Part shown: positions 3,546 through 54,800 of the stretch, piece after piece
How positions within the stretch are numbered: the first letter of the stretch is position 1
Layout: the number at the start of each line of letters is the position of its first letter
Assembly: GCA_029953675.1 (NCBI GenBank)
Contig: JAMWBK010000009.1
Location: 1,054,001-1,118,000 of the forward strand
DNA: 64,000 nt
Direction of reading: 5' to 3'
Source: Rhodosorus marinus CCMP1338
Taxonomy: Eukaryota; Plantae; Rhodophyta
Notes under the pieces: model-generated
The model's database searches: none
The model's input: the letters and a program-made list of their open reading frames with translations, nothing else
Told to the model about the DNA's origin: nothing
Made by a program: the position numbers and the translations under genes

Positions 3546-6293
3546 ATGGATACTCTAGCTCATACGATCGAGGTTTCGGAGCCTTCCCTCAATTTTGCTG
3601 CGGAGATGAGGCAGGAAGCGATGGAAAAGTTTCCGCCGTTGGGCCCGCCGGACATTGTCACGGTGAAAAAAGAGCACTCTCCTTCTTATGGCAAGACTGT
3701 TGAGCAGGTATGAATGAGACTTCGTCGAATTTTCTGAACAGATTTTCAGTGGCGCTTTCCAGAATTCCTCGCGTGCATGCATTCTGCGCAATACTAATCA
3801 CACGATTTGCTGTTCCAACGTCTTCAGACGTACTATCACTGTGTGAGAGGATATGACGTGAGCAGCGAAGAGGTGGTCTCCGCGTACATAGCTAGTCTCG
3901 TGAGCTCCGGTTTTAGAATGGGATCCTGGTATCAGGTAAGGTTATCACTGAAATAGTTCATCCCAGCAGCTTTCATTGCAACGCTGATAATTCACTTCCG
4001 GTCCCACAGCAGTCATCAGGAGGTCGTTGGCAAATTCAGAAAGTGTGGTATAGATCATATTGTATTCTCAGCAAACTGGACATTGTTGTGACCGCGGATT
4101 TCCCCGGAAGTGTAGCAGTTTGCGGTCTAGATGCGGACGGGAACGAAGTCGAAGTGACACCAGATACGTGGAAGGACTGCTTTCTCAGTGCTGCGTGTAG
4201 GCATATTCAAAGGATAGGAGAGGCTCCTATATACCCGTGTATGAAGGTAGTGAGAATCGTCAAATTGTCTTTCGGACAAGTGCTTGGCGGTGTCCAAGAA
4301 GGGCCTGTCCCTCCCGCTTTTAAGCCGTTAGGTTGCCTAACAGTCTTTTCTCTTGATAGGTTTATGACTTGTTCGCAGATCCGACTTTGGAGGAACAGAT
4401 GCTCACGTACGCACTTGATCTACAGGAGAAGTGGCATCTTGCGGGTACCAGCCGGGCCTACAAGCACGAAGGAGATCGGTCGGAAGGGGGATGTGCCGAC
4501 TCTCGCATAGCAACGACAATATACGAGCATTTTGTATCGCAGGCCAGATTTCAGCAAGCAGTTGACTTCTTCAAAGAGAGAGCCAGCAAGCGCGATCCTG
4601 AGTGTGCAGTTCACGCGGCTAGAGCCTATCTCGCACAGGTACCCTGGAAATTTTCCCATGCTGAGTTTTGAAACACCCCACGGCCTGCTAATCTTTGGTA
4701 GTTAGCGATTTACAATATGCAGAGCGGCAGGAAAGGCCTCTCACAGATTTGTCCGAACGTTTGCGCAGGGAAACGTCCCAGCCGCGGTGGAATTGCTCGA
4801 GGACGTGTTGAAGCAGCTCCCCAACTCTAAGTTTGCTAGTTGCGTATTGCTTGAAGCTCTTTCTTCGAAGGGTGAATTTGAAGAAGCGGGACGTTACTAT
4901 GAGTCTCACAAACAAACCGTCGAATCGGATTCACTCGCAGTAATCAATGTTGCACAGGCTATGGCGAAGGCGGGGAAATTCGGTACAGCATTGACCATCC
5001 TTAATTTGGCTGAGATGCCGACGCCACCACTGGACCCCCTCTTACGAGAATTGATCCCCGCGAAGAGCAGCAAGACAACGCATGAGTACTCAAAAGAAAA
5101 GCTAACTGACCTTGATGCTGCCAGGATCATGGCCCTTCGCCTAAAGGAGGAGAGGAGACCAGGATTAGACAAGAATTTGAACGAACTTCCCGCAAAGATG
5201 ATGACGGAAACCGACCGCGCTGCCTACAACGTTCTTGTGACTGTCCTTGAAGCCATTGGCTGGGAAAGCGTTCTCGATGTTCGTTCCAAATGTTTTATCA
5301 TGCGTGAGGACGTTGAAAAGCGTTGGAAACAAATTGAGGACGAGGCTAGGGAAGCAGAAAGAGGCACTGATGGTGATGCCGAAGAGGAGGAGCAGCCCAA
5401 CGCCGCTCAGGGGGAGCAGAATGGACACGGCGCAAGTACTGAAGACAGCCCGGAAGCGGGTTCCAGCATGACGGTTGCGGAAGCGGAAGAAGGAAAGGGT
5501 GGTACCATAAGTGAGGAAGAACTGCGGCCGGTAATACTTACGTCAGAAGGTCTTGATGATGAAGAACCCAACGAGTTGTCAATTTCGAATTCTCCCGGTC
5601 CGCAACCTTCAACAGCGAACAAAGTGTCCAGCATCGAGAAGGTGACGAACAAGCGTCTTTGCCAGCTTTGGCTGGATTACTTAGTTATGACCATGTTCGA
5701 AGATCTCAGATGTAAGCGGGAGATGATGGCGGAGCTCCGGGACAAGGAAGAGGAGTCCGTCCCTTTGGATACGATTGTGAAGGAAACAATTCTGACAGGA
5801 GGGGACTGGCTTCGAAGGGCGCAGCTCTCCATAAGGCTACGCATGCGGAACGAGGCCATCAGTTGTCTGGAAATTAGCAGGCAGCTGTATGAGAAGAAGT
5901 CCAAGCTTGCTCTTGCTGTGCACATCGAGTGGATGGACTTCTGTGTCTCGGAGGGTGACGTGCAAGGTAGCTTGGAACAGATTGCATCAGTGGTAAACGG
6001 TCTCTACACGCTCATTCCGCACACTCGTCGAATAGCGTCAGTCAATCAAGTGCGAACAGCTGTGTTCGGTTTGGTATCAAAGGCTGGATTGCGCGATGTT
6101 CGAGCCGCCGTAAACGACATGGACGAAAAATCTTCAACTAGAATTCATCCGGTAGGCTCTACGATATGACCTTATCTAAGCAGGATAGTCGGACAGTCAG
6201 CTGAAAAAGAGCTGTTTCTTGTCCCGCGTTTCTTTCTCTCTGCAGGTGCTTCTGGATGCCGTTAACTGGCATGTCCATCGCTACGATGATTAG
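3546..6293 (+). CDS. ChAPs (Chs5p-Arf1p-binding, Bch1/Bud7-like) exomer cargo-adaptor homologue, TPR-containing, multi-exon
   Basis: N-terminal E..L..A..R.E....F.PLGPPDIV.VKK motif, CGLDADG, helical TPR-like repeats and a central acidic insertion. The last exon is VLLDAVNWHVHRYDD*. Confidence 0.75.
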
Positions 6294-34362: not shown

Positions 34363-36604
34363 TCACGAAGCAACTCGGCGTTGTCTTATGCCGGAGTCCT
34401 CTTTATCCGGTACTATTTCAGATTCCTCCCCAACCTGGTGTCCAATGTTCAACGAGGCATGCTCTTTTCAGTTGCTTGAGGAAAGATTGCGGCAACGAAC
34501 AGATATGCACTAGAAGCAAGACAGACCGGTTCACTGGCCACAGGATCGTCTTTCGTCTCTGCATCGTCCTTCTTGCTCTCTGATGCGTCCGGGTCGGCGG
34601 TGTCTCCCGTTGCGTTCTCCGGAGTGGCTGAGTCGTCCTCGTCCTCCTCCGGCCCTTCCTTGTAGCTCCTGTACAATTGGTAGGCTGCGGAAGCGAAGAT
34701 CGGAGAGAAGCACAGCAGCAAGAGGATGAATGTAAACGCGTGGGGCATGCCCGTGCTCTCCACCGCGCTCACTACGTTTCCATATCCGTTGTTGATTAGC
34801 AAATAAGCAAGGTTGCGATGGATTCTTGACATGTAGTCCTACGCAACACAATACAACGGACGTGAGAATTTGTTGCCCCGCAAGATGATGTTCCGATAGT
34901 CACCATTACATCAATCGTTCTCCCTATGTTTTCCAGCTTCGTTCCCGTTGACGTGGATTGCTGTCGTTCTGCTTCTGCTTCACCGAGCGTTTTCACTTTC
35001 CACGTCCTAAGCGCGATTTCCCCAGCTTCCCCCTCGTCCGTGCAGACCAAAACGTTGTCAAATCGAATGTTTGTATCCATTACCCACAGCTCAATGCCAA
35101 CAGCTGAAAACTTGAGCAAGCGCGGATTCTCCACCTGGAACGAGAGAAAGAGCAGTCAGCATCCTTCTGAATCCGTTCAAAGTATCCTTTGCTCGTCCTC
35201 ACCCTATAGTGCTCTGGGTTTGGTACTTTTCGTGGCTTCCACTCCCCGATGTACTTCGGGTTTTTAATCAGTTGAGGCGTCCACGCTCCCTTGTACTTCG
35301 GGTTCGCAACAAGCGGCGCTGTCCAAGGACCGCATCCCACGTCACATTTTGGATTCTGAATCAGCGGAGGCATCCATGCGCCTTCCTCCTGATCGTCCCA
35401 ATCCTCCGGTCTCACCGCCCTCACATCCGCGATCGTTGGCGGCTCGTCCTCCAGCCAACCCTAACGGACAAAACTAGTTAGCACCATAACTTACATTCGA
35501 TGACCACAGGCTCGTCGTGTTTTTACCTCTGGCATTTTTGCTTCAGGGTCTGCATGCATCCTCGGTTCATTCTCGTCCCAGTCATCCGGCTTCTTATCCT
35601 CCGGATCCGGGATTTCAGATTGATCTTCCCAGTCCTCGGGCTTAACATCTTCCGGATCGTCGACCTCCTCGGGCGGGGTTAACGGCGGTGAAAATTCACT
35701 CGGGTCGCTGTGAACCGAACATCAACGACAGGAGGTAGAGCTTCAACACGTGAACCGCGCAGCAAAACTGGTGCTAGTTTAGAGTTTGGAAACGGTGGAA
35801 AATAGATTTACCTGATTTTGCCGCTTCTGACAACCTCGTTATCAATCTTCATCTTAAATTCCTCCCCTTTAATAACGAGCGTGTACAAGTGAGTTTTTCT
35901 GTCCATTCCCGCGATCTGCGGAGGTCTCAGCATGTGGTGCTCTTCGAGCTTGCCAGTCACTTTGTTCGGGTACTGCCGTAGAAGCATGAGGTCTAGACAA
36001 TCAGTACAAAAGACCCTGCGTATTCCGTACCCTTTCCTGGCCCTAGTGATTGCTTCTTCTTGCTCACCTGAAAGATGAAGTGAACGCGATTGTTTTGCCC
36101 GCATCGATCGGGTCCAAACATAATAGAGTAAGGCAGCCCATCTTTAACCTGGTCCAGATCACTAAACGGGCTTTTGATCAACTTGAGGTACGAACCCGAA
36201 CATGTCAATCCGTGCTCGTACTTGACGTCGTACTGTACGACGAGTTCATCGTGGTCGGCGGGGTTAACCTCAACCTTTTGTGCAATGCCATAATGCTTTG
36301 CATCATTGGGGATCATCATATCACGATCTCCTTCCAGAACCTTCGTATCACACACACACACACATAAACAGGAATAAAACTGCTGTAAGAAAAACCAGAT
36401 CCTCTCGAAAACGTGGTAAGGCCAGATCAAACTTCCACTTACCCCTTGCTCAAGAGCAAACTTTCCTTGGTACTTCTCATCAGATGCATGAGTCCACGCC
36501 AGCTCTCCCTTATCGAACGTATCCAAAAACAGGACCTCCCCTTGAGATCCGCAAACCCAGATCGCCAAAATGGCGATCAACCCAAGCATCCTTATTCTGT
36601 ACAT
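34363..36604 (-). CDS. CANX: Calnexin
   Basis: Signal peptide, then LVVQYDVKYEHGLTCSGSYLKL, YSIMFGPDRCG, P-domain repeats (PEDWDDQEEGAWMPPLIQNPKC) and GIELW. It has a C-terminal TM and a tail ending GIRQRRVAS* (ends at 34449 if the last intron is retained). Confidence 0.93.
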
Positions 36605-38089
36605 CGTCGCTGAACTCATCGCCAAATCGGAATCATCAAGGAACAAAACATTAATCCTCCTCCTCACTTCATCTGGCACCTGTTACATTCCATGCAGCAC
36701 TTTATGCTCACCTGAATCCAAATCAGTTCTCTCAAAGAAAGCCCGAACTGTAGACACCCGACCCCACACGCCCACGCAGTCCTTCCAGCGTTCGGCGCCG
36801 CGTGCTGTTCATATCGCCGGCGTACGATGTCCCACTTTTGACAACATTGGGACACGACCTGTTGGAAATTATTGGGACACCTATGAATTGGCATTAAGAG
36901 GTGAGGTCGCGTGCCTACCGATCTCGATCAAGGCAGAATAATGAAATCACAGGAGTTGTTTGAAGGAGTTGATGATCATTGGGAGCTATCCCCTCTGAAT
37001 TTTTCAGAGGCGATAGCTCCGCGGGATTGTGACCTCACTTGGTGTCTTCAAGTACAGGATGATCTTCTGTTATCGCCGTCAAGATCTGCCTGACTTTGTT
37101 CCCCATCACAGTAGCAAATTGGCGGACGGCGTTGACCCAACAACCCATGAAGAGGCTAAGTGCGAGGGTTCTTGGTTGGCCTGCACTTTCTGAGGAAGGC
37201 GTATACCTCTGACGGCCGACTTCATTCGGGCATCCACCTTCCTTAGGAGATTCTGTGCGCTAATGAGCTACGCCGGTTTCTCCTCACCAAGCGACCTCCA
37301 CAAATCTCCCGTCACATCCGTGACCTTAGGCCAGACAAAAACCCGCCAGGTTCACAAGTCCGAGTGCGTTCGATTCCCACTTTATGCTAGCTCAACCTGC
37401 GTTTGTTCGCAACTGGTCCTCGCCGCTCTGGACTGGGTTTGCTTCCCGAATTGAAGACGAATCCTCAACATGTGACGGAGAAATTTGATGAGATCGGGTG
37501 ACACTAGCTCCGAATTCTGCCCTACTAGGACGTCCCCAATGTACAAGGATCTCCCTGCCTATCGCCGCCCTTGTCTCGGTGTTTTGTCCCAGTTCGCTGT
37601 CCGCGTAAAAACCGGTGAAGCCTGTTTGGGACACGCAAAGAACTGGCCTCGACGTGAAGCTGCGTTGAGATTGATCTCGATTAAAGCAGAATATTGATAT
37701 CATAGGATTGACTTGAACCATCTGGCGATAATGGCTCTCTATTATTGTCGTCAAGCATGGCCCCCTCTTCTCGTATACCCACAGCATACGGCGGTGGCTC
37801 TGGACCAAGAATGAAACAACAAGCCGTGCTGGTTCCTTGATACAGAAATCTATTCTTGGATCTGGTTTTAATCCAAGGCTACGCCATCTTGCGTGCTACC
37901 CGAACACCCAAAAGTATGGGTTTCAATCTTGAGCCTTGATGGGGGCGATGAAGATGCCTCAGTGGTTCGGTTCTAGAGGATCAGGTCACGTCGATGCGGA
38001 TATGCTTGTTCTTTTCTAGCGATGAGAAGTAGAGTATGAGATAAGCAGGGATTGAGGCCTGAATTCGCCTGGCGCATACACGGTTACGA

Positions 38090-39060: not shown

Positions 39061-39783
39061 TCAGTCGAAAGAAGGCATCTCAATTGCGTTCACCTTCGCT
39101 ACCGAATCTCGCGTTGAAATCAGATCCTGCCAACGTTTCACATTCTCAAATCCTTCAAACTTGTCCTTAATTTCATCGCTCAGCGCTGGTGAGTAACTCC
39201 ACCAGTAGCATGCGATATCCGCGATTGTGAGCTCGTCTCCACAAATGTACTTATTCTCAGATAACTGCTTGTCAAGAACACCGAACAACCGTAGCGACTC
39301 CTTCATGTACCGCTCTTTACCGATAGGGTCGTCCACCTTGCTATAGAGGTGGAAGAAATTGTTCTGCCCAAGCATAGGACCGAATCCAGCCATCTGCCAG
39401 TACAGCCATTCCTTCACATTGTACCTTTGCTTTAGATCATTTCCACCGGCAAGCTTTGTGTCGTGCTTTTCAGCAAGGTACTCAAGAATGGCCCCGGACT
39501 CGAAGACCGCCATGTCGTCCGTCGTGTGATCAACAATCGCTGGAATTTTCGAGTTCGGATTAACCTTCACGAACTCATCCGAGAACTGCATATTCTTTCC
39601 GATATGAATCCATTTCAGATCATAAGTCTGCCCGAGCTCCTCCAGCATCATCGAAATCTTCTTCCCGTTGGGAGTCGGGAAGTAGTACAACGAATAATCC
39701 GCCATCCTCCTACGAGTGCTCAGCCGCCTACTCACAGAAGCCCCAGATACTCTCGCAATCGGACCCGTCACAAAATTCAACAT
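39061..39783 (-). CDS. Glutathione S-transferase, YfcG/Ure2-like class, intronless, with a putative transit peptide
   Basis: YYFPTPNGKK, NPNSKIPAI, FESGAILEYLAEK, WLYWQMAGFGPMLGQ and TIADIA. A 26-aa Ser/Arg-rich N-terminal extension precedes Met at 39705. Confidence 0.92.
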   Translation of the reverse strand: MLNFVTGPIARVSGASVSRRLSTRRRMADYSLYYFPTPNGKKISMMLEELGQTYDLKWIHIGKNMQFSDEFVKVNPNSKIPAIVDHTTDDMAVFESGAILEYLAEKHDTKLAGGNDLKQRYNVKEWLYWQMAGFGPMLGQNNFFHLYSKVDDPIGKERYMKESLRLFGVLDKQLSENKYICGDELTIADIACYWWSYSPALSDEIKDKFEGFENVKRWQDLISTRDSVAKVNAIEMPSFD

Positions 39784-45378: not shown

Positions 45379-46131
45379 TTTAACATACCATTCGAGTGGA
45401 TCAGCATTTCCGTCCAGGCGCTTTGTAATGAAGCATATGTTTTTTTGTACAATGCGCAAAAGTCCTGGTGTGCTTCACAAGAACCGATATTCAAGTAATT
45501 GCCCCCGTCACCGTCATTCGGGCTAGCTTAAGGGAGTCAACGTCGCGGTAAAAGCCAGCACAAACTGCTCGAACGACAAAGCTAGTCCAGATACTCAGAA
45601 CTACTGATCTACTACAAACACAGAGCTCATATAGATAAAATTTAAAATCCATGACCTAGCCATCAAGCTTGACTCTGAACCCAACAACCCAGTAGTCCGA
45701 CCTGACACTCGCACTCTCCCTAGCTCACCAAATCCATTTTGCCCATCCGACAGTGGAGAGAAACACAAATTATTAGAAAATGTAATATATTTTTATGCAT
45801 TTTCATTAAAACCAGGTATTCTTGGAATTCCCTTATACTAGGGGAATAAATTATTTAAATTTAATAATTTGTTGATATAGATATTAATTAACTTAATTCA
45901 AAATATTTATAGATGAATAGTGCTTCTTTTTTATCCTAAGGAGTATGAAAATGAGCGATGGAAAATTCGGGAAAATCCGTTTTTTCCGTGGAGAGGTTGG
46001 GAAGATACTCTGGTGATTTTCGGGGCGGAGACGGGAAGGGGTTTTGAAAGGCTGGATACGTCTATGGTCTAAAGCAGAATTGATCTGGTTACTGTTGAAA
46101 CTGCTGTTTTCTCTTTTATATTCTCTAGAAG

Positions 46132-48120
46132 ATGGGAGACGAAATGAGAATATTGTCCCTTCTGCCATCCTGCACTCAGATTGTGCTGGGGTTGTCGCTT
46201 CGGGAGTACCTTGTGGGTGTCACTCACGAGTGCGAGATTGATGGGAATTCTGCGGAAATTGAAGGGGTTGAACGAGTCACGAGCTCAGTAATACCGATTG
46301 GAACGACATCACAGAAGGACATTGATCTCGCGGTCAAGACATCGGTCAGCAGCGGGATTTCGTTGTACACGATTGACGAGGACAAGTTTGCGAGAGTGAA
46401 TCCGAGCATCATATTGACGCAAAACCTGTGTTCAGTATGTGCACCGACTAAGAAAGAGGTTCAGCGAGTCTCGGATGTTGCTTACCCAGATTCTTGCGCT
46501 CATCATGGATTGAACATTGTCAGTCTCGAGCCGACTTGCCTGGATGAAGTCGCGGATACTTTCATGACGGTTGCGGATGAGTGTCAAGTGCACGATAGAG
46601 GAATTGGGCTCAAGGCGAAGTTCTATTCTGAACTTTACAAAGTGGAAAATGCCACGAATCGAATCAGAGAAAACTTGGACCTGCGAAAACCAACTCTAAT
46701 GTTGCTGGAGTGGCTAGATCCACCTTTTGACGGAGGACATTGGGTCCCGGACATGGTTGAAATCGCTGGTTGCATCCCTCCCGATAGCTTTGGAGGAAAG
46801 AAACGGCGATCTCTGGAAAGATCCTGGGAGGACATTGTCAGTGCAGACCCTGAAGTAATTTTGGTGGCCTGCTGTGGATTTGACCTGGAGAGGAATTTCA
46901 AAGATGCGACAGAAACACTGTTCGATGCGGACTCTGAGGTTTCGAAGATGTTCCAGTCTCTGCGAGCCACTCGAAATGGACGAGTATTCGCAGTAGATGC
47001 GAATCAGTACTTTGCCCAGCCTGCGCCTCAGCTGAGCATGGGCGCTGCTCTGATGGCTCGATTAGCGTACGATAACGACGATCGCGCTGTCTCATTGTTG
47101 AACGATGCTCTTGGCGATCTCATTCCAGCTGAAGGAGCCGGCTGGAAACGGCTGAAACCGAAAGTCGTGGAGGGATTTAAAGAAACCAAAGTGAAGGACA
47201 TTGAATCTGTGTGGGAATTACATGACGAAGCAGTAAAGAATCAGCAACTTCACTACACTGACCCAGAGACGGGTCTTTTCGTGTTCACCAGTCTCGCCCA
47301 TAAGAGACGAGGACGCTGTTGCGGAAGCGGATGTCGTCATTGCCCATATGGACATGAAAACGTTTCCCTGGAAAAGAGGTCGGAGTTCATCGTGCAGGCC
47401 TCCTTCCTCAACAAGAGGCGGGCAGATGGATTCGCAAAACACCGATACGTGGTGTTTTTCAGCACCGGCAAGGATTCTTTCTTAGCCTTGCGCCAATGGA
47501 TTGCTCTCAAGCGCAGAGAGGACAAAATGGGGTGGGAGGAAGTTCTAGATAGAATCGTCCTGTTGACGTCATTTGACAGTACAACCAAAAGGATCGCGCA
47601 CCAGGATACTACCATCGACGACGCTCGTCGCCAAGCAAAGGCACTGGATCTGAGCCTCTTAGCAGTGCCCCTGCACCCTGGGAAAGATTATGTTAGAAGC
47701 ATTGATGAGGCTCTGGACTTGGTTCGAACGCAACAAGGCGCGGAAACATTCTCGCTCGTGTTCGGTGACCTCCGTCTCGAACTAATCAAAGATTGGCGTG
47801 ATAAGTATCTTGGTCACCTGGGCATACTAGAGTACCCACTCTTCGGAGTCGACTACGACGAGCTTTTCCAGGATCTGCAGCTTAGTGGCGTGCCCTGCAC
47901 AATCACCTCCCGTGAGTTCGGTAAGGACCTTCACGAGAGGTCGTGTCAAGAGGTTTATGTCGGACGGGAGTTCGACGCAGAGCTCCGAAAAGCTTGCGTT
48001 GAATGTGGATGGGACGATTTTGGTGAGGACGGAGAATTTCATACTCTAGCTCGTGTGTGGGAAGTGGACAGCAGAAGAGCCCTGGGCTTGTGCGGTGAAA
48101 CCCGAGCTTTTCAGCAATAG
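46132..48120 (+). CDS. Intronless 662-aa fusion: BtuF/TroA-like (cobalamin/Fe-siderophore class III) binding domain + Cys-rich DUF5522-like domain + DUF71/COG2102 PP-loop ATPase
   Basis: aa5-312: RILSLLPS.T.IV, VGVTHEC, TQNLCSVCA, EWLDPPFDGGHWVPDMVEIAG, ACCGFDL, VDANQYF. aa361-410: YTDPETGLFVFT..AHKRRGRCCGSGCRHCPYGH. aa439-645: FSTGKDS, FGDLRLE.I..WR, GEDGEFHT. Confidence 0.85.
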   Translation: MGDEMRILSLLPSCTQIVLGLSLREYLVGVTHECEIDGNSAEIEGVERVTSSVIPIGTTSQKDIDLAVKTSVSSGISLYTIDEDKFARVNPSIILTQNLCSVCAPTKKEVQRVSDVAYPDSCAHHGLNIVSLEPTCLDEVADTFMTVADECQVHDRGIGLKAKFYSELYKVENATNRIRENLDLRKPTLMLLEWLDPPFDGGHWVPDMVEIAGCIPPDSFGGKKRRSLERSWEDIVSADPEVILVACCGFDLERNFKDATETLFDADSEVSKMFQSLRATRNGRVFAVDANQYFAQPAPQLSMGAALMARLAYDNDDRAVSLLNDALGDLIPAEGAGWKRLKPKVVEGFKETKVKDIESVWELHDEAVKNQQLHYTDPETGLFVFTSLAHKRRGRCCGSGCRHCPYGHENVSLEKRSEFIVQASFLNKRRADGFAKHRYVVFFSTGKDSFLALRQWIALKRREDKMGWEEVLDRIVLLTSFDSTTKRIAHQDTTIDDARRQAKALDLSLLAVPLHPGKDYVRSIDEALDLVRTQQGAETFSLVFGDLRLELIKDWRDKYLGHLGILEYPLFGVDYDELFQDLQLSGVPCTITSREFGKDLHERSCQEVYVGREFDAELRKACVECGWDDFGEDGEFHTLARVWEVDSRRALGLCGETRAFQQ

Positions 48121-51810: not shown

Positions 51811-54800
51811 CTACATAGAACGCACTTGTCCCGGTAGACTTCTATCATTTGCCTCTAAACGCTTCTGAGGTTCCAAGGTTGAAGCCGCAAACCCTGTTGT
51901 CGAATGGTGATTGCATTTGCCGAATGAGGCAAGCGCTAGGCTACCAGCTGTGAAGATTAGGGCTTCCTCTTCCTTTTCGCTCAGAGCTGAAGCCGAAGAA
52001 CTGAATGCCGAAAAATAGTTTATTAACAAAAAAACACGGGGCCCTACTTACAACCATTTTGGCCAGTGTTTTCGTAATTGCCTGCCATGTCCGCAATTAG
52101 GAACCACCATATGGTCACTACCCTGCAGAGATAGGATCCTGCTGCCAAACACAACGCGTCCCGCCATGTCAAGCCTCACGCTGGCCTCGGGTTCGTTGAA
52201 GAGCACCGTGTCTACAGCTCCCACGTACTCGCTATCATCGTACCACAGAGTCCGTTGAGCACCTTTCCACTGATAATTCTCTGATACGTTGGCATGAGAA
52301 CGGAATGTTGACTCCTCCACTTCAATAGTCTCTTCCTGAATCTCGATCTCCACTGTGACATCCTCTGCTTCCTCGTCCGAGTCACTCGAAGCCAAGCTTG
52401 AGTCCATATCCGCGCCCTGATTCAGTACGACGTTCCACGGAGGTTGTCCGTCATTGCTCTGCGTAAAGCTACCCCATCGATCCTGCTTCGGGACCACTAC
52501 AGAACTGCCTCTACTCCCTGCTGATGGAGACCTGGGTTCGGCAATCTCTCGAGCACTTGGAACCGCCCCATCTCGTCTGCTAATCGCACCCACAGAACCC
52601 CGGCGATCTCCTTCCACGCGGTCCAAGCCTTCAATAATTCCTAGCTTGTCCAACCTGAGTGACAACTCATCGCCGAACGCGTCCAAGTCCAAGTTCAAAT
52701 CAGCATCCATGCCCTTTGACTCGATGGTAAGCCCGGGCAAAACAGGCTCACCAGAATGCGCAGGAACCAAATCGGGATCGCTCTTGCTCTTCACGGCTTG
52801 AGTTTGCTGAGACTCCTCTACGCGTGCACCGTGGCTGGCGTGTTGTCTGAGGTTCCACGAGCTGCTAGACTGAGTTGTGGACTCACCAACTAACTTCGCT
52901 ACGTTGTTGGCGCCTGCATCCTTCGTGGCTGAGTTCGAAATCCTTTCTCTCTGTCCGGGTGCCGTGGAAGATGCCTCCACTTGCGCTTGTTTGCTGCCTA
53001 CCAGGGGCGCCTTTCCACATTGGTCATTTTGAGTCACGTCTTGAGCTCTTCCATTTGGCTCCAACAACGCCGGCTCAGGCATTCTTCCTCCTTGGTCCAA
53101 CATTCCCAGCTCCGGAGTCTGGGGGTTTGATCGGTTCGATCGGTGGCTGCTGGGATCGGAGGTTTCCCTGGAAGGTCCTAACGATGTCGACTCAGTCCCC
53201 TGATTAGCTCTTGCCCGAGAAATGGCTGCGCTGTTCTTCTGTCGCTGACTTTTCGAGTTGCTTTGCCTGATTGTCGGTGTAATAGGCATCATTGGAGGAC
53301 TCTGCGACAGACTATCATCCTCTCGAAACTTGCCCAATAGGTTGCTGAAAACTCTCGCACGTTCTGACGTTGCAGAACTGGCTGACAATTCGTCCTTGTC
53401 AAACTTGGAAGACGTGGAGCGTTTCACCTGGGTTCCGATCTCCTCCTGATAATCCCGAGACGAGCGTCTACTTCTCCCGGGAGACTTGAGCCCATCGGAC
53501 TTTGACTTTTCCGTAGATTTCTTTGACCACGGCATGAGCTTACGTAATCCCCTCTGGAACGTGGATTCATATCCTTCCTCACTCTTCCGCCCATCCGAAT
53601 CACGTGGCTCGTCGTCCTCCCTCAGACTTCTCTTGGGTGTCAAGGGCGTTTGGGGAGTCCTTGGGGTTTTCGGCGTTCCAATCTCTTCGTCCCTGTCCCT
53701 CGGGGCAATGTCCCCAAGGGATTTTGAGGATCTAGTTCGGCGCAGACCAGTACCTTCTTCTGCTTCAGACGAAGGGTTCGACCTTGGCGCTGACTTAATC
53801 TTGCCTTCTTCATCGATTGACCTATTCTTCCTTCTTTTTCGCCTCCCTGGTCGAGCCTTACCGGGCTCCCCTTCACTGTCTCCCTCGCTTTCCCCGTACC
53901 ACACGTGCCGCTTTACGTCAGAAAAGGAGTACCTGTAAAGGCCAGAACGCACGAGGGGTATTTTTCATAGGCTTAGGGCGATCAGGAAAATCTTCAAGCT
54001 CTCGAAAAAACCGGAAAACTGAATCCCTTGACGGGACATACCTCTTCGAAGGATCCTTTCTAAACATGTTTTCTAACAGGTCAACTAGACCCGGAGAAAA
54101 CTCTGGGGGGCATTCCACGCCCTTATTTACGATGCTATTGTACAAGACTTGGATATCCTCGTCCATGAAAGGGAGACTGCCAGCCACCAAACCGTAGAGT
54201 ATGATTCCCGAAGACCAAACGTCAACCTTGACGCCATCATAACCGTCGGAGGCTCGGGTAATAATCTCCGGGGCTGTGTAGTGAGGGGTGCCAACCTGTG
54301 TATGCAGCAGCTCCGTAGCAGACCCCGCTCCTTTGATAGAGACGAGGCCAAAATCACCGATCTTGATCACACCATCTTTGTCAAGCAGCAGGTTATCAAA
54401 CTTGAGATCTCGATGGAAGACCCCTCGCGCATGGCAATAGAGCATTCCTTCCGTAAGTTGTTTGAAGTAAACTCGAGCTTCGTTCTCATCAAAGGGTCCC
54501 CTGCGCATGAGCTCGTCGTAAAGCTCGCCTCCTTCCACCAGGTCCATGATCATGTAGATGTGTTTAGGGGACATGAGAACCTCATACAAGTTGACTATGT
54601 TCTTGTGGCGCATGGCCTTCATCACCGCGATCTGTGAAGTACAAGTGAAGCATTTCAGCTTTCAGTGTCAGCCCTCCCAGAACCTACCGAAAAATAATAA
54701 TCAAAGCCGAGAGCGACTTTTATGGCCCGAAAAAAGTATTCTGGCTGGTCGAACCTCTCTACGAACTTGGTTGGTCATTTCGTGAGCACGAATTTGACTC

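What the first reader, a model, noticed from the sequence alone, without database searches (positions are those of the whole stretch)
46132..48120. Bacterial B12-salvage-like gene trio fused into one intronless eukaryotic gene (BtuF-like + DUF5522-like + DUF71 ATPase)
Seen: a single 1989-bp ORF with no introns, although most neighbouring genes are interrupted every ~100-300 bp. It has three modules: a class III solute-binding (BtuF/TroA-like) domain with no signal peptide, a CCGSGCRHCPY Cys cluster, and a PP-loop domain (STGKDS ... FGDL..E....WR ... GE.GEFHT). Established: the DUF71/COG2102 family includes eukaryotic/archaeal Dph6, while its bacterial members have been linked by comparative genomics to cobalamin salvage clusters with BtuF-like proteins, and many algae depend on bacterial B12. 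Inference: this is a horizontally acquired, fused cytosolic corrinoid-binding and ATP-dependent (amidating/remodelling) enzyme with a metal-binding linker. That would be an uncharacterised eukaryotic route for B12 capture, repair or remodelling, distinct from the secreted CBA1-type binders.
Basis: partly seen in the sequence, partly recalled or inferred. Interest (0 to 1): 0.82.

Follow-up and report, generated by a model that had tools for sequence, protein, structure and literature searches.

The report
Cytosolic B12-linked three-domain enzyme gene
This red-alga-like gene encodes one intronless protein that joins a vitamin-B12/heme-type binding domain, a small cysteine-rich domain and an ATP-using enzyme domain; comparative evidence links all three to vitamin B12 handling, the same protein exists in many B12-using protists and some bacteria, and its reaction is still unknown.

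Summary
Window 46132..48120 (+) is one complete 662-aa ORF with three domains: a BtuF/heme-type binding domain without a signal peptide, DUF5522 (CCGSGCRHCPY), and a DUF71 PP-loop ATPase.

- **Not a fusion made in this alga.** The same full-length architecture occurs in bacteria (Polyangiaceae and other MAGs) and in diatoms, dinoflagellates, diplonemids, a pelagophyte and Creolimax. Its origin is unresolved (32% bootstrap with the myxobacterial clade).
- **Not Dph6.** The catalytic Glu188 position is His637, which is the published DUF71-B12 signature.
- **The B12 link is supported.**
  - Cobalamin riboswitches lie directly upstream of bacterial orthologue operons in 4 of 65 loci scanned, and in neighbouring operons in 2 more. 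Some loci also carry btuF/FecCD/ABC genes.
  - DUF5522's only detected partner domains are the BtuF-like domain, DUF71, an ABC ATPase and the MMAB/PduO-type cobalamin adenosyltransferase. All 120 listed hits to a DUF5522–MMAB query carry both domains, including named diatoms and a chlorarachniophyte.

Best reading: a cytosolic corrinoid-processing enzyme whose chemistry is untested, probably ATP-dependent adenylation or amidation of a corrin carboxylate. I rate it a new variant of a known, only-predicted kind. No paper in the searched library mentions DUF5522.

The parts
46132..48120 (+). Complete intronless ORF of 662 aa encoding the three-domain protein
   Evidence: ORF; in-frame stop at 46126; 92% identical to a Rhodosorus marinus protein, and 40-50% identical over 98% of its length to hundreds of homologues.
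46132..47166 (+). N-terminal class III solute-binding (BtuF/heme-SBP-like) domain, aa 1-345, without a signal peptide
   Evidence: Pfam Peripla_BP_2, 45.3 bits. PDB profile hits to 4m7o, Vibrio BtuF 5ysc and ShuT 2r7a. AF2 pLDDT about 91. Foldseek top hits are RhuT, PhuT, ShuT and BtuF, with TM (target) 0.71-0.81.
46225..46233 (+). H32-E33-C34 motif; H32 and C34 are invariant across 102 homologues
   Evidence: In the profile alignment it falls in the loop that aligns with the 'SEYSDYP' loop of Vibrio BtuF. It is absent from the true periplasmic BtuFs of L069 and L072.
46429..46440 (+). C100-x-x-C103 motif, both Cys invariant
   Evidence: It is retained in the split bacterial versions L060, L053 and L070.
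46870..46884 (+). C247-C248-G-F-D motif (C248 invariant, C247 in at least 90%), in the C-lobe
   Evidence: Actinomycetota have P-C-G-F-D instead.
47170..47202 (+). Flexible linker, aa 347-357
   Evidence: pLDDT below 50 for residues 347-357. This region varies in length in the alignment.
47203..47361 (+). DUF5522 domain, aa 358-410
   Evidence: Pfam PF17653, 81.9 bits, aa 363-410. The domain-only AF2 model has pLDDT 79.6 and no PDB fold match, best E = 2.6.
47317..47355 (+). Cys/His cluster C396-C397-G-S-G-C401-R-H403-C404-P-Y-G-H408
   Evidence: C396, C397, C401, C404, H403 and H408 are invariant in 102 homologues and nearly so in 112 further DUF5522 proteins.
47437..48066 (+). DUF71 (COG2102) PP-loop ATP pyrophosphatase domain of the DUF71-B12 type, aa 436-645
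   Evidence: Pfam Diphthami_syn_2, 21.7 bits. Family profile against PF0828/3rjz, E = 2e-8. It is 39% identical (E = 2e-53) to the riboswitch-controlled DUF5522-DUF71 gene of L051.
47461..47478 (+). PP-loop S444-T-G-K-D-S449
   Evidence: S444, G446, K447, D448 and S449 are invariant. They align with SGGKDS of PF0828.
48019..48045 (+). F-G-E-D-G-E-F-H637-T motif (DUF71-B12 signature)
   Evidence: It aligns with GEGGEFE188T of PF0828, with His637 replacing the Dph6 catalytic Glu188. This matches the ENGE[F/Y]H signature in PMC3541065.

Best explanation
The gene encodes a cytosolic corrinoid (vitamin B12 family) processing enzyme. It belongs to a conserved but uncharacterised family found in many B12-using protists and scattered bacteria.

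Proposed mechanism:
1. The N-terminal BtuF-like domain has lost its export signal. It holds an imported corrinoid in a cleft lined by four invariant cysteines and a histidine.
2. The Cys4/His DUF5522 module is a corrinoid-associated metal- or thiolate-binding adaptor, possibly redox-active or acting as a hand-off device.
3. The C-terminal DUF71-B12-type PP-loop ATPase uses ATP to adenylate a carboxylate on the corrinoid. The most economical guess is re-amidation or ligation of a corrin side chain during repair or remodelling.

What is shown: the domain identities, the intact ATP-binding motifs, the non-Dph6 active-site signature, the family distribution, and the B12 association of each module.

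What is inferred: that the corrinoid is the substrate, what the cysteines do, and which reaction is catalysed.
For: **Anatomy and fold.** Searches give a high-confidence SBP fold, closest to heme and B12 binders. There is no signal peptide.

**DUF71-B12 signature.** His637 sits at the Glu188 position and the PP-loop is intact. This matches the subgroup that PMC3541065 found adjacent to B12 transporter genes in 75 of 102 cases.

**Cobalamin riboswitches (RF00174) at bacterial orthologue loci.**
- L051, L065 and L069: riboswitch, then TonB-dependent receptor, then DUF5522-DUF71. The L051 gene is 39% identical to window aa 356-662, E = 2e-53.
- L060: riboswitch, then DUF6580 membrane protein, then the Cys-type BP domain (HEC, CxxC, CCG), then DUF71.
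- L070 and L071 (Actinomycetota): 2 and 3 riboswitches in neighbouring operons.
- Overall, 10 riboswitches in 6 of 65 loci (845 kb).

**Transporter genes.** The btuF/FecCD/ABC_tran operons of L072, L068, L053 and L036 include the gene.

**DUF5522 partner domains.** A DUF5522 profile finds 3802 representative proteins. Among 112 top hits that are not full-length, the only partner domains are Diphthami_syn_2, Peripla_BP_2, Cob_adeno_trans and one ABC_tran.

**DUF5522–MMAB fusions.** A query with one such fusion returned 120 of 120 listed hits carrying both domains. They include the annotated MMAB of Fistulifera, Cyclotella cryptica, Nitzschia and Seminavis, proteins of Thalassiosira profunda and Skeletonema dohrnii, and Amorphochlora; the Bigelowiella fusion (P0151) was found separately.

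**Hosts.** The eukaryotes carrying the three-domain gene are diatoms, dinoflagellates, a pelagophyte, diplonemids, an ichthyosporean and a red alga.
Against: - No experiment exists for any family member.
- Most bacterial loci (59 of 65) show no riboswitch. Most neighbourhoods are lineage-specific and unrelated to B12.
- The closest bacterial full-length homologues stand alone, with no B12 genes nearby.
- The SBP fold does not separate B12 from heme or siderophore ligands, and the top Foldseek hits are heme binders.
- Four invariant cysteines in the cleft could hold an Fe-S cluster or zinc and leave no room for a corrinoid.
- The window protein scores just below Pfam's cut-off for DUF71 and has STGKDS rather than SGGKDS.
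- The window itself carries no B12-related neighbour and no Rfam element.
- I could not obtain model coordinates, so the spatial clustering of the cysteines is inferred from topology only.
Confidence: 0.62

Rival explanations
1. Heme-, iron- or other metal-chelate-handling enzyme. The SBP-like domain would bind heme, a siderophore or a metal, and the Cys clusters would bind Fe-S or zinc. The PP-loop domain would act on a non-corrinoid carboxylate.
For: The top structural matches are heme-binding SBPs (RhuT, PhuT, ShuT), ahead of BtuF. JGI labels the family 'iron complex transport system substrate-binding protein'. TonB receptors and FecCD/ABC neighbours are also typical of iron uptake.
Against: The riboswitches upstream are cobalamin riboswitches at 73-87 bits, not iron-responsive elements. 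DUF5522 is fused to cobalamin adenosyltransferase and to no heme or iron enzyme. The DUF71 signature is the B12-linked one.
Confidence: 0.12
2. An Fe-S-dependent PP-loop enzyme with chemistry unrelated to B12, for example thiolation or another adenylation-dependent modification. It would be only secondarily co-located with B12 genes in a few bacteria.
For: PP-loop ATPases with Cys-ligated Fe-S clusters are an established type (my own knowledge of the TtuA/Ncs6 class, not tested here). There are nine invariant or near-invariant Cys in the protein. Most bacterial loci lack B12 context.
Against: Three independent associations point to B12: riboswitch operons in Betaproteobacteria and Terriglobia plus riboswitch-rich neighbourhoods in Actinomycetota, the btuFCD operons, and the MMAB fusions. 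No tRNA- or nucleotide-binding domain is detected.
Confidence: 0.12
3. A divergent diphthine-ammonia ligase (Dph6) that finishes diphthamide on EF-2, as the public names of several diatom orthologues say.
For: Distant homology to Dph6 structures PF0828 and PH1257. UniRef names the Cylindrotheca, Chaetoceros and Seminavis orthologues 'Diphthine--ammonia ligase'.
Against: The catalytic Glu188 is replaced by His637. NCBIfam Dph6_archaeal scores 10.8 bits against a cut-off of 197. There are no RidA/YjgF domains. The same family is present in bacteria, which have no diphthamide (PMC3541065).
Confidence: 0.03
4. Assembly contamination, or a dead relic of a bacterial gene.
For: It is intronless in an intron-rich region, and bacteria carry the same architecture.
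Against: The flanking genes are eukaryotic (calreticulin, kinase, RPL15, GST). Composition and codon use match the neighbours. The ORF is intact and every family-invariant residue is conserved. A 92%-identical protein is recorded for Rhodosorus marinus. Related eukaryotic contigs also carry it without introns.
Confidence: 0.01

Closest known systems
DUF71-B12 subgroup of DUF71/COG2102 PP-loop ATPases (de Crecy-Lagard et al. 2012, PMC3541065)
   Same: PP-loop motif. The E-x-G-E-F-H signature has His in place of Dph6 Glu188. Bacterial relatives sit next to btuFCD genes and behind cobalamin riboswitches. The function is predicted only (B12 salvage, possibly replacing bacterial CbiZ).
   Different: The window domain is only 22% identical to a classical stand-alone DUF71 from a B12 locus. 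It belongs to a distinct sub-branch that always carries DUF5522 in front and is often fused to a cytosolic BtuF-like domain. The 2012 paper's second cluster held only bacterial and a few archaeal sequences, and its text mentions no diatom.
Dph6 (diphthine-ammonia ligase; PF0828, yeast YLR143W)
   Same: Same DUF71 fold family and the same ATP-binding residues. The ancestral chemistry, carboxylate adenylation followed by amidation, is the simplest model for this enzyme too.
   Different: Glu188 is replaced by His. There are no RidA domains. The score against the Dph6 equivalog model is far below its cut-off. The family occurs in bacteria.
BtuF and heme-binding class III periplasmic binding proteins (ShuT, PhuT, RhuT)
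   Same: Two-lobe fold joined by a long helix, with TM (target) 0.71-0.81. Conserved residues lie on the loops at the C-terminal ends of the strands, where these proteins bind tetrapyrroles.
   Different: No signal peptide, so it is cytosolic. It is fused to enzyme domains. It carries an invariant H-E-C ... C-x-x-C ... C-C set that true BtuFs in the same operons lack.
DUF5522-MMAB (PduO-type ATP:cob(I)alamin adenosyltransferase) fusions of diatoms and chlorarachniophytes
   Same: Same DUF5522 module with the CCG-x-GCRHCP-[YF] cluster, attached to a B12-processing enzyme in the same groups of protists.
   Different: The catalytic partner is an adenosyltransferase rather than a PP-loop ATPase. 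DUF5522 is often duplicated. There is no BtuF-like domain.
CbiZ / CbiR cobamide-remodelling amidohydrolases
   Same: Possible functional analogy. PMC3541065 reports strict anti-correlation of DUF71-B12 and CbiZ in bacteria.
   Different: No sequence relationship. A hydrolase needs no ATP, whereas this enzyme keeps an intact PP-loop. Diatoms are reported to carry CbiZ-CbiB fusions, so the two can occur within the same group.
CBA1 (algal cobalamin acquisition protein)
   Same: Involved in B12 supply in algae.
   Different: CBA1 functions in uptake. This protein is cytosolic and enzymatic, and it is unrelated in sequence.

Membership tests
DUF71-B12 subgroup (PMC3541065) | PP-loop ATP-binding motif SGGKDS | tested here: met
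   S444-T-G-K-D-S449. S, G446, K, D and S are invariant in 102 homologues and align to SGGKDS of PF0828. The second residue is Thr in the Rhodosorus clade.
DUF71-B12 subgroup (PMC3541065) | ENGE[F/Y]H motif, with His replacing Dph6 Glu188 | tested here: met
   E632-D-G-E-F-H637. The family consensus GEnGEfHt aligns to GEGGEFET of 3rjz.
DUF71-B12 subgroup (PMC3541065) | Physical clustering with B12 transport or salvage genes in prokaryotes | tested here: met
   Cobalamin riboswitch operons in L051, L065, L069 and L060. btuF/FecCD/ABC operons in L072, L068, L053 and L036. This holds for only a minority of loci.
DUF71-B12 subgroup (PMC3541065) | Passes the Pfam PF01902 gathering score | tested here: inconclusive
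   21.7 bits against a cut-off of 23.2 for the window protein. Some family members pass, and the family profile reaches PF0828 at E = 2e-8.
DUF71-B12 subgroup (PMC3541065) | Close sequence relationship to classical stand-alone DUF71-B12 proteins | tested here: not met
   22% identity, E = 2e-4, to the classical DUF71 of L051. This compares with 39% identity, E = 2e-53, to the DUF5522-DUF71 gene of the same locus. It is therefore a separate sub-branch.
Dph6 (diphthine-ammonia ligase) | EGG[E/D]xE188 catalytic motif | tested here: not met
   His637 sits at the Glu188 position.
Dph6 (diphthine-ammonia ligase) | Reaches the NCBIfam Dph6 equivalog score | tested here: not met
   TIGR03679, 10.8 bits against a cut-off of 197.3.
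Dph6 (diphthine-ammonia ligase) | C-terminal RidA/YjgF domains, typical of eukaryotic Dph6 | tested here: not met
   No such Pfam hit. The protein ends 24 residues after the EDGEFHT motif.
Dph6 (diphthine-ammonia ligase) | It is the only DUF71 gene of the genome | not testable with these tools
   Only a 64-kb window is available, and no organism-restricted search exists.
BtuF-type periplasmic B12-binding protein | Class III SBP fold | tested here: met
BtuF-type periplasmic B12-binding protein | N-terminal export signal and periplasmic location | tested here: not met
   The protein starts at strand 1 of the fold. The true BtuFs of L069 and L072 have hydrophobic N-terminal leaders by my reading of their translations.
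BtuF-type periplasmic B12-binding protein | Binds cobalamin | not testable with these tools
   This needs a binding assay. The fold cannot tell B12 from heme.
DUF5522 (PF17653) | Pfam model match with the CCGxGCRHCP[YF] cluster | tested here: met
   81.9 bits against a cut-off of 25. The Cys and His residues are invariant.

The most novel reading that the evidence does not exclude
DUF5522 is a previously unrecognised corrinoid-handling module, either a thiolate or Fe-S hand-off device or a reduction device. It serves both the MMAB adenosyltransferase and this DUF71 enzyme. The three-domain protein would then be the missing ATP-dependent enzyme by which B12-dependent phytoplankton and other protists repair or remodel scavenged corrinoids in the cytosol. 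Because one diatom orthologue is labelled 'chromosome 1 open reading frame 53', the uncharacterised human protein C1orf53 may carry the same module. That would extend the idea to animal B12 trafficking.
Probability: 0.25. Interest if true: 0.85.

Novelty: new variant of a known kind. Interest (0 to 1): 0.62.

Why it matters
About half of surveyed phytoplankton need external B12 (abstract seen). Much of the corrinoid available in the sea is in forms they cannot use directly. The known algal toolkit comprises CBA1, COBT/COBS/COBC and, in some diatoms, CbiZ-CbiB. It does not explain how imported corrinoids are processed inside the cell.

This family is conserved, intronless and widespread, and all three of its modules are independently tied to B12. 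It is a concrete, testable candidate for that step. It would also give the 2012 DUF71-B12 prediction an experimentally tractable eukaryotic and bacterial handle. The DUF5522-MMAB fusion is a second, independent lead for B12 cofactor maturation. Finally, the public names attached to these proteins ('Diphthine--ammonia ligase', 'iron complex transport substrate-binding protein', 'ABC transporter substrate-binding protein') are domain-transfer labels and are probably wrong.

Tried and rejected
1. **Dph6 identity.** Rejected on the active-site motif, model scores and bacterial distribution.
2. **Contamination.** Rejected on the flanks and composition.
3. **'Fusion arose in this eukaryote'.** Rejected, because the full-length architecture is present in bacteria in genuine bacterial contexts.
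4. **Myxobacterial donor.** A simple NJ tree suggested it, but the bootstrap is only 32%. The nearest clade (68%) consists of other eukaryotic contigs. The origin is left unresolved.
5. **Neighbourhood enrichment by all-vs-all clustering of crude ORF calls in 80 loci**. Most recurrent neighbours were lineage-specific: multicopper oxidase, amidohydrolase, peptidase M3, PBP and Ig-domain proteins. One 'cluster' consisted of antisense shadow ORFs from high-GC genomes. Only the transporter genes were informative.
6. **Fold search for DUF5522 alone.** No meaningful PDB match, best E = 2.6.
7. **CCG/HdrB-like Fe-S domain idea for the CCG + CxxC motifs.** There is no Pfam CCG hit at E of 1 or below, so it remains a resemblance only. 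The weak Pfam hit to the Oxidored-like (OXLD1) domain (E = 0.021, 11 residues) is motif-level only.
8. **Targeting peptides.** N-terminal extensions in some homologues are inconsistent and probably gene-model artefacts.
9. **Literature.** No paper in the searched library mentions DUF5522, PF17653 or DUF6580. The two papers on algal and diatom B12 genes that I term-searched do not mention DUF71, diphthamide or, as an algal gene, BtuF.
10. **Rfam scan of the window.** Nothing found.
Full report
**Observation**

Window 46132..48120 (+) is a single 662-aa ORF starting at ATG. An in-frame stop lies 6 nt upstream. Pfam finds three domains:
- Peripla_BP_2, aa 126-290, 45.3 bits, above the cut-off.
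- DUF5522, aa 363-410, 81.9 bits.
- Diphthami_syn_2, aa 438-639, 21.7 bits, just under the 23.2 cut-off.

The N-terminus aligns with residue 1 of the bacterial and eukaryotic homologues, and the AlphaFold model places the first beta strand at residues 7-9. There is therefore no signal or transit peptide.

The surroundings are eukaryotic and mostly split into exons. Only 10 ORFs of at least 200 aa exist in 64 kb, and this is the longest. The kinase, calreticulin and RPL15 matches are partial exons. A GST-like gene at 39061-39783 (-) is also uninterrupted. The ORF's GC (0.51) and GC3 (0.53) resemble its neighbours'. The best database match is a Rhodosorus marinus protein at 92% identity, so the window is from a Rhodosorus-like red alga.

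**What the protein is**

A 102-sequence alignment gave an AlphaFold model with mean pLDDT 90.9 and pTM 0.59. The only disordered stretch of note is the linker at residues 347-357.

*N-terminal domain.* It is a class III solute-binding fold.
- Foldseek's best PDB matches are the heme binders RhuT, PhuT and ShuT, with BtuF close behind (target TM 0.71-0.81).
- Profile searches also hit 4m7o, Vibrio BtuF and ShuT.
- Unlike real BtuFs, this domain carries an invariant H32-E-C34, C100-x-x-C103 and C247-C248 set. The periplasmic BtuFs encoded in the same bacterial operons lack these residues.
- These residues sit just after beta strands in the model. In this fold, that is where ligand-contacting loops lie. 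This last point is my own structural knowledge, and the coordinates could not be inspected.

*DUF5522.* It carries the invariant C396-C397-G-x-G-C401-R-H-C404-P-[YF]-x-H408 cluster. A domain-only model (pLDDT 79.6) has no structural relative in the PDB.

*C-terminal domain.* It is a DUF71 PP-loop ATPase. A family profile matches the Dph6 structure PF0828 (3rjz) at E = 2e-8. SGGKDS aligns, and the family consensus GEnGEfHt lies over GEGGEFET, so His637 occupies the position of the Dph6 catalytic Glu188. De Crecy-Lagard et al. (PMC3541065) give exactly this replacement, ENGE[F/Y]H, as the signature of the 'DUF71-B12' subgroup. The NCBIfam Dph6 model scores 10.8 bits against a cut-off of 197, and there are no RidA domains. 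It is not a Dph6.

**Distribution: the fusion is not special to this alga**

The same full-length architecture, at 40-50% identity over 98% of the query, occurs widely:
- Bacteria: Polyangiaceae MAGs and other bacterial MAGs, in genuine bacterial gene contexts.
- Diatoms: Cyclotella, Thalassiosira, Stephanocyclus, Skeletonema, Chaetoceros, Fragilaria, Nitzschia, Cylindrotheca, Mayamaea, Seminavis and Detonula.
- Dinoflagellates (Symbiodinium, Gymnodinium), diplonemids (Artemidia, Namystynia), a pelagophyte and the ichthyosporean Creolimax.

Bacteria also carry the pieces in other combinations:
- BP plus DUF5522 alone.
- DUF5522 plus DUF71 alone.
- Adjacent split genes.

Phylogeny is weak at depth. 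Rhodosorus plus an unknown eukaryote (P0002) has 100% bootstrap. Adding two more sequences, of which P0030 is a eukaryotic contig carrying LSM, DENN and SEP genes, has 68%. Union with the myxobacterial clade has only 32%. These eukaryotic relatives are also single uninterrupted ORFs. A bacterial origin is plausible but neither the direction nor the number of transfers is shown. 'Fused into one eukaryotic gene' is not supported.

**The B12 link**

I scanned 65 bacterial loci (845 kb) with Rfam and found 10 cobalamin riboswitches in 6 loci.
- In L051, L065 and L069 (Burkholderiaceae/Polynucleobacter-like) the order is riboswitch, TonB-dependent receptor, then DUF5522-DUF71, with 17-48 bp gaps between the receptor and the DUF5522-DUF71 gene. 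L069 continues with a signal-peptide BtuF.
- The L051 gene is 39% identical to window residues 356-662 (E = 2e-53). A classical stand-alone DUF71 next to it is only 22% identical. The window's C-terminal half therefore belongs to a distinct DUF5522-linked branch.
- In L060 (Terriglobia) a riboswitch precedes a DUF6580 membrane protein. Next comes a 312-aa cytosolic BP protein with the same HEC/CxxC/CCG cysteines, and then a DUF71 gene.
- Two Actinomycetota loci, L070 and L071, have two and three riboswitches in neighbouring operons.
- L072, L068, L053 and L036 place the gene in or beside btuF/FecCD/ABC-ATPase operons.

These are a minority. 59 of 65 loci show no riboswitch, and most neighbours are lineage-specific. 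The closest full-length bacterial homologues stand alone.

**An independent line from DUF5522**

A DUF5522 profile finds 3802 representative proteins at E of 1e-3 or below. Among the 112 top hits that are not the full-length fusion, the only other Pfam domains are:
- Diphthami_syn_2 (21 proteins).
- Peripla_BP_2 (7).
- Cob_adeno_trans (2).
- ABC_tran (1).

The Cob_adeno_trans cases carry two DUF5522 copies in front of a PduO/MMAB-type ATP:cob(I)alamin adenosyltransferase. They come from a marine eukaryotic (MMETSP) transcriptome and from Bigelowiella. Searching with one of them returned 120 of 120 listed hits with both domains. These include the annotated MMAB of Fistulifera, Cyclotella cryptica, Nitzschia and Seminavis, proteins of Thalassiosira profunda and Skeletonema dohrnii, and Amorphochlora. 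DUF5522 is thus attached, in eukaryotes, to an enzyme whose only known substrate is a corrinoid.

**Mechanism (inference)**

The most economical model is a cytosolic corrinoid-processing enzyme.
1. The BtuF-like domain holds an imported corrinoid.
2. DUF5522 acts as a Cys/His metal- or thiolate-based adaptor. Possible roles are electron transfer for cobalt reduction or a Co-S hand-off. Both ideas rest on my general knowledge of B12 trafficking, not on any test here.
3. The PP-loop domain adenylates a corrinoid carboxylate. Since Dph6 converts a carboxylate to an amide, re-amidation or ligation of a corrin side chain (repair or remodelling) needs the least change. The Glu-to-His swap warns that the chemistry may differ.

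The 2012 paper's suggestion of a CbiZ-like role fits poorly with a conserved ATP site, because hydrolysis needs no ATP.

I put 0.62 on 'B12-family substrate and a processing role'. My confidence in the specific amidation reaction is much lower.

Rivals:
- A heme or iron ligand (0.12).
- Fe-S-dependent PP-loop chemistry unrelated to B12 (0.12).
- Dph6 (0.03).
- Contamination or relic (0.01).

**Comparison with what is known, and novelty**

The family is a variant of the DUF71-B12 group, whose function is itself only predicted. Four things appear to be undescribed:
- The DUF5522-linked branch.
- Its fusion to a cytosolic, cysteine-lined BtuF-like domain.
- Its wide presence in B12-using protists.
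- The DUF5522-MMAB fusion.

No paper in the searched library mentions DUF5522 or PF17653. The two papers on algal and diatom B12 genes that I term-searched contain no mention of DUF71 or diphthamide. Public names for the orthologues ('Diphthine--ammonia ligase', 'iron complex transport system substrate-binding protein', 'ABC transporter substrate-binding protein') are domain-transfer labels.

One orthologue is labelled 'chromosome 1 open reading frame 53'. Human C1orf53 is uncharacterised. Whether it carries DUF5522 could not be tested here.

**Verdict**

Eukaryote-specific fusion and horizontal acquisition are not established, and the reaction is unknown. Interest 0.62; novelty: new variant of a known kind.

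Noticed in passing
P0150, P0151 and the hits (no window coordinates): The MMAB/PduO-type cobalamin adenosyltransferases of named diatoms and chlorarachniophytes carry one or two N-terminal DUF5522 domains. All 120 listed hits have PF01923 plus PF17653. No paper in the searched library mentions DUF5522.
   Followed up: yes
L060:7176-7998: A DUF6580 membrane protein lies directly behind a cobalamin riboswitch (87 bits) and ahead of the BP and DUF71 genes. It is a candidate B12 transporter component. No paper in the searched library mentions DUF6580.
   Followed up: partly
L070:9754-11721 (-) and L071:2162-6253 (-): Large proteins with squalene-cyclase/prenyltransferase-toroid-like repeats lie on the same strand as, and just downstream of or near, cobalamin riboswitches in Actinomycetota. 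L071 has three such riboswitches within 17 kb.
   Followed up: partly
L051:754-1434 (-): A classical stand-alone DUF71 (128 bits to PF01902) is divergently placed next to the riboswitch / TonB receptor / DUF5522-DUF71 operon. That makes two distant DUF71 paralogues in one B12 locus.
   Followed up: partly
L072:194-4556: One operon in a Bordetella-like MAG encodes, in order: DUF5522-DUF71; a leaderless BP-like protein without the Cys motifs; a signal-peptide BtuF; a FecCD permease; and an ABC ATPase.
   Followed up: partly
P0455 (Seminavis robusta orthologue): This orthologue is named 'chromosome 1 open reading frame 53'. It suggests that the uncharacterised human protein C1orf53 shares the DUF5522 module. 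I could not test this with the available tools.
   Followed up: partly
L020:419-2117: An array of 19 tRNA genes is packed into about 1.7 kb in a Longimicrobiales MAG.
   Followed up: no
L061:5625-5728, L063:11364-11467, L076:14201-14304: A glycine riboswitch lies a few kb downstream of the DUF5522-DUF71 gene in three Polynucleobacter-like loci. This is probably unrelated synteny.
   Followed up: no
L084:13764-15032: A HupE/UreJ-family (Ni/Co transporter family) gene lies two genes downstream of the full-length bacterial homologue P0033.
   Followed up: no
window:39061-39783 (-): A GST-like gene (240 aa, GST_N plus GST_C) is also uninterrupted, so the target is not the only intronless gene nearby. 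Other neighbours are partial exons: calreticulin 35993-36679 (-), protein kinase 53918-54625 (-), RPL15 from 50865 (+), and a ChAPs-like ORF at 4787-6169 (+).
   Followed up: partly
window:47221-47235: The DUF5522 residue that is Cys in at least 90% of homologues (alignment position 368) is Val in the Rhodosorus clade. It is therefore unlikely to be an essential metal ligand.
   Followed up: partly
P0436: A 980-aa homologue carries spermine-synthase domains in addition to the three domains. This is probably a merged gene model.
   Followed up: no
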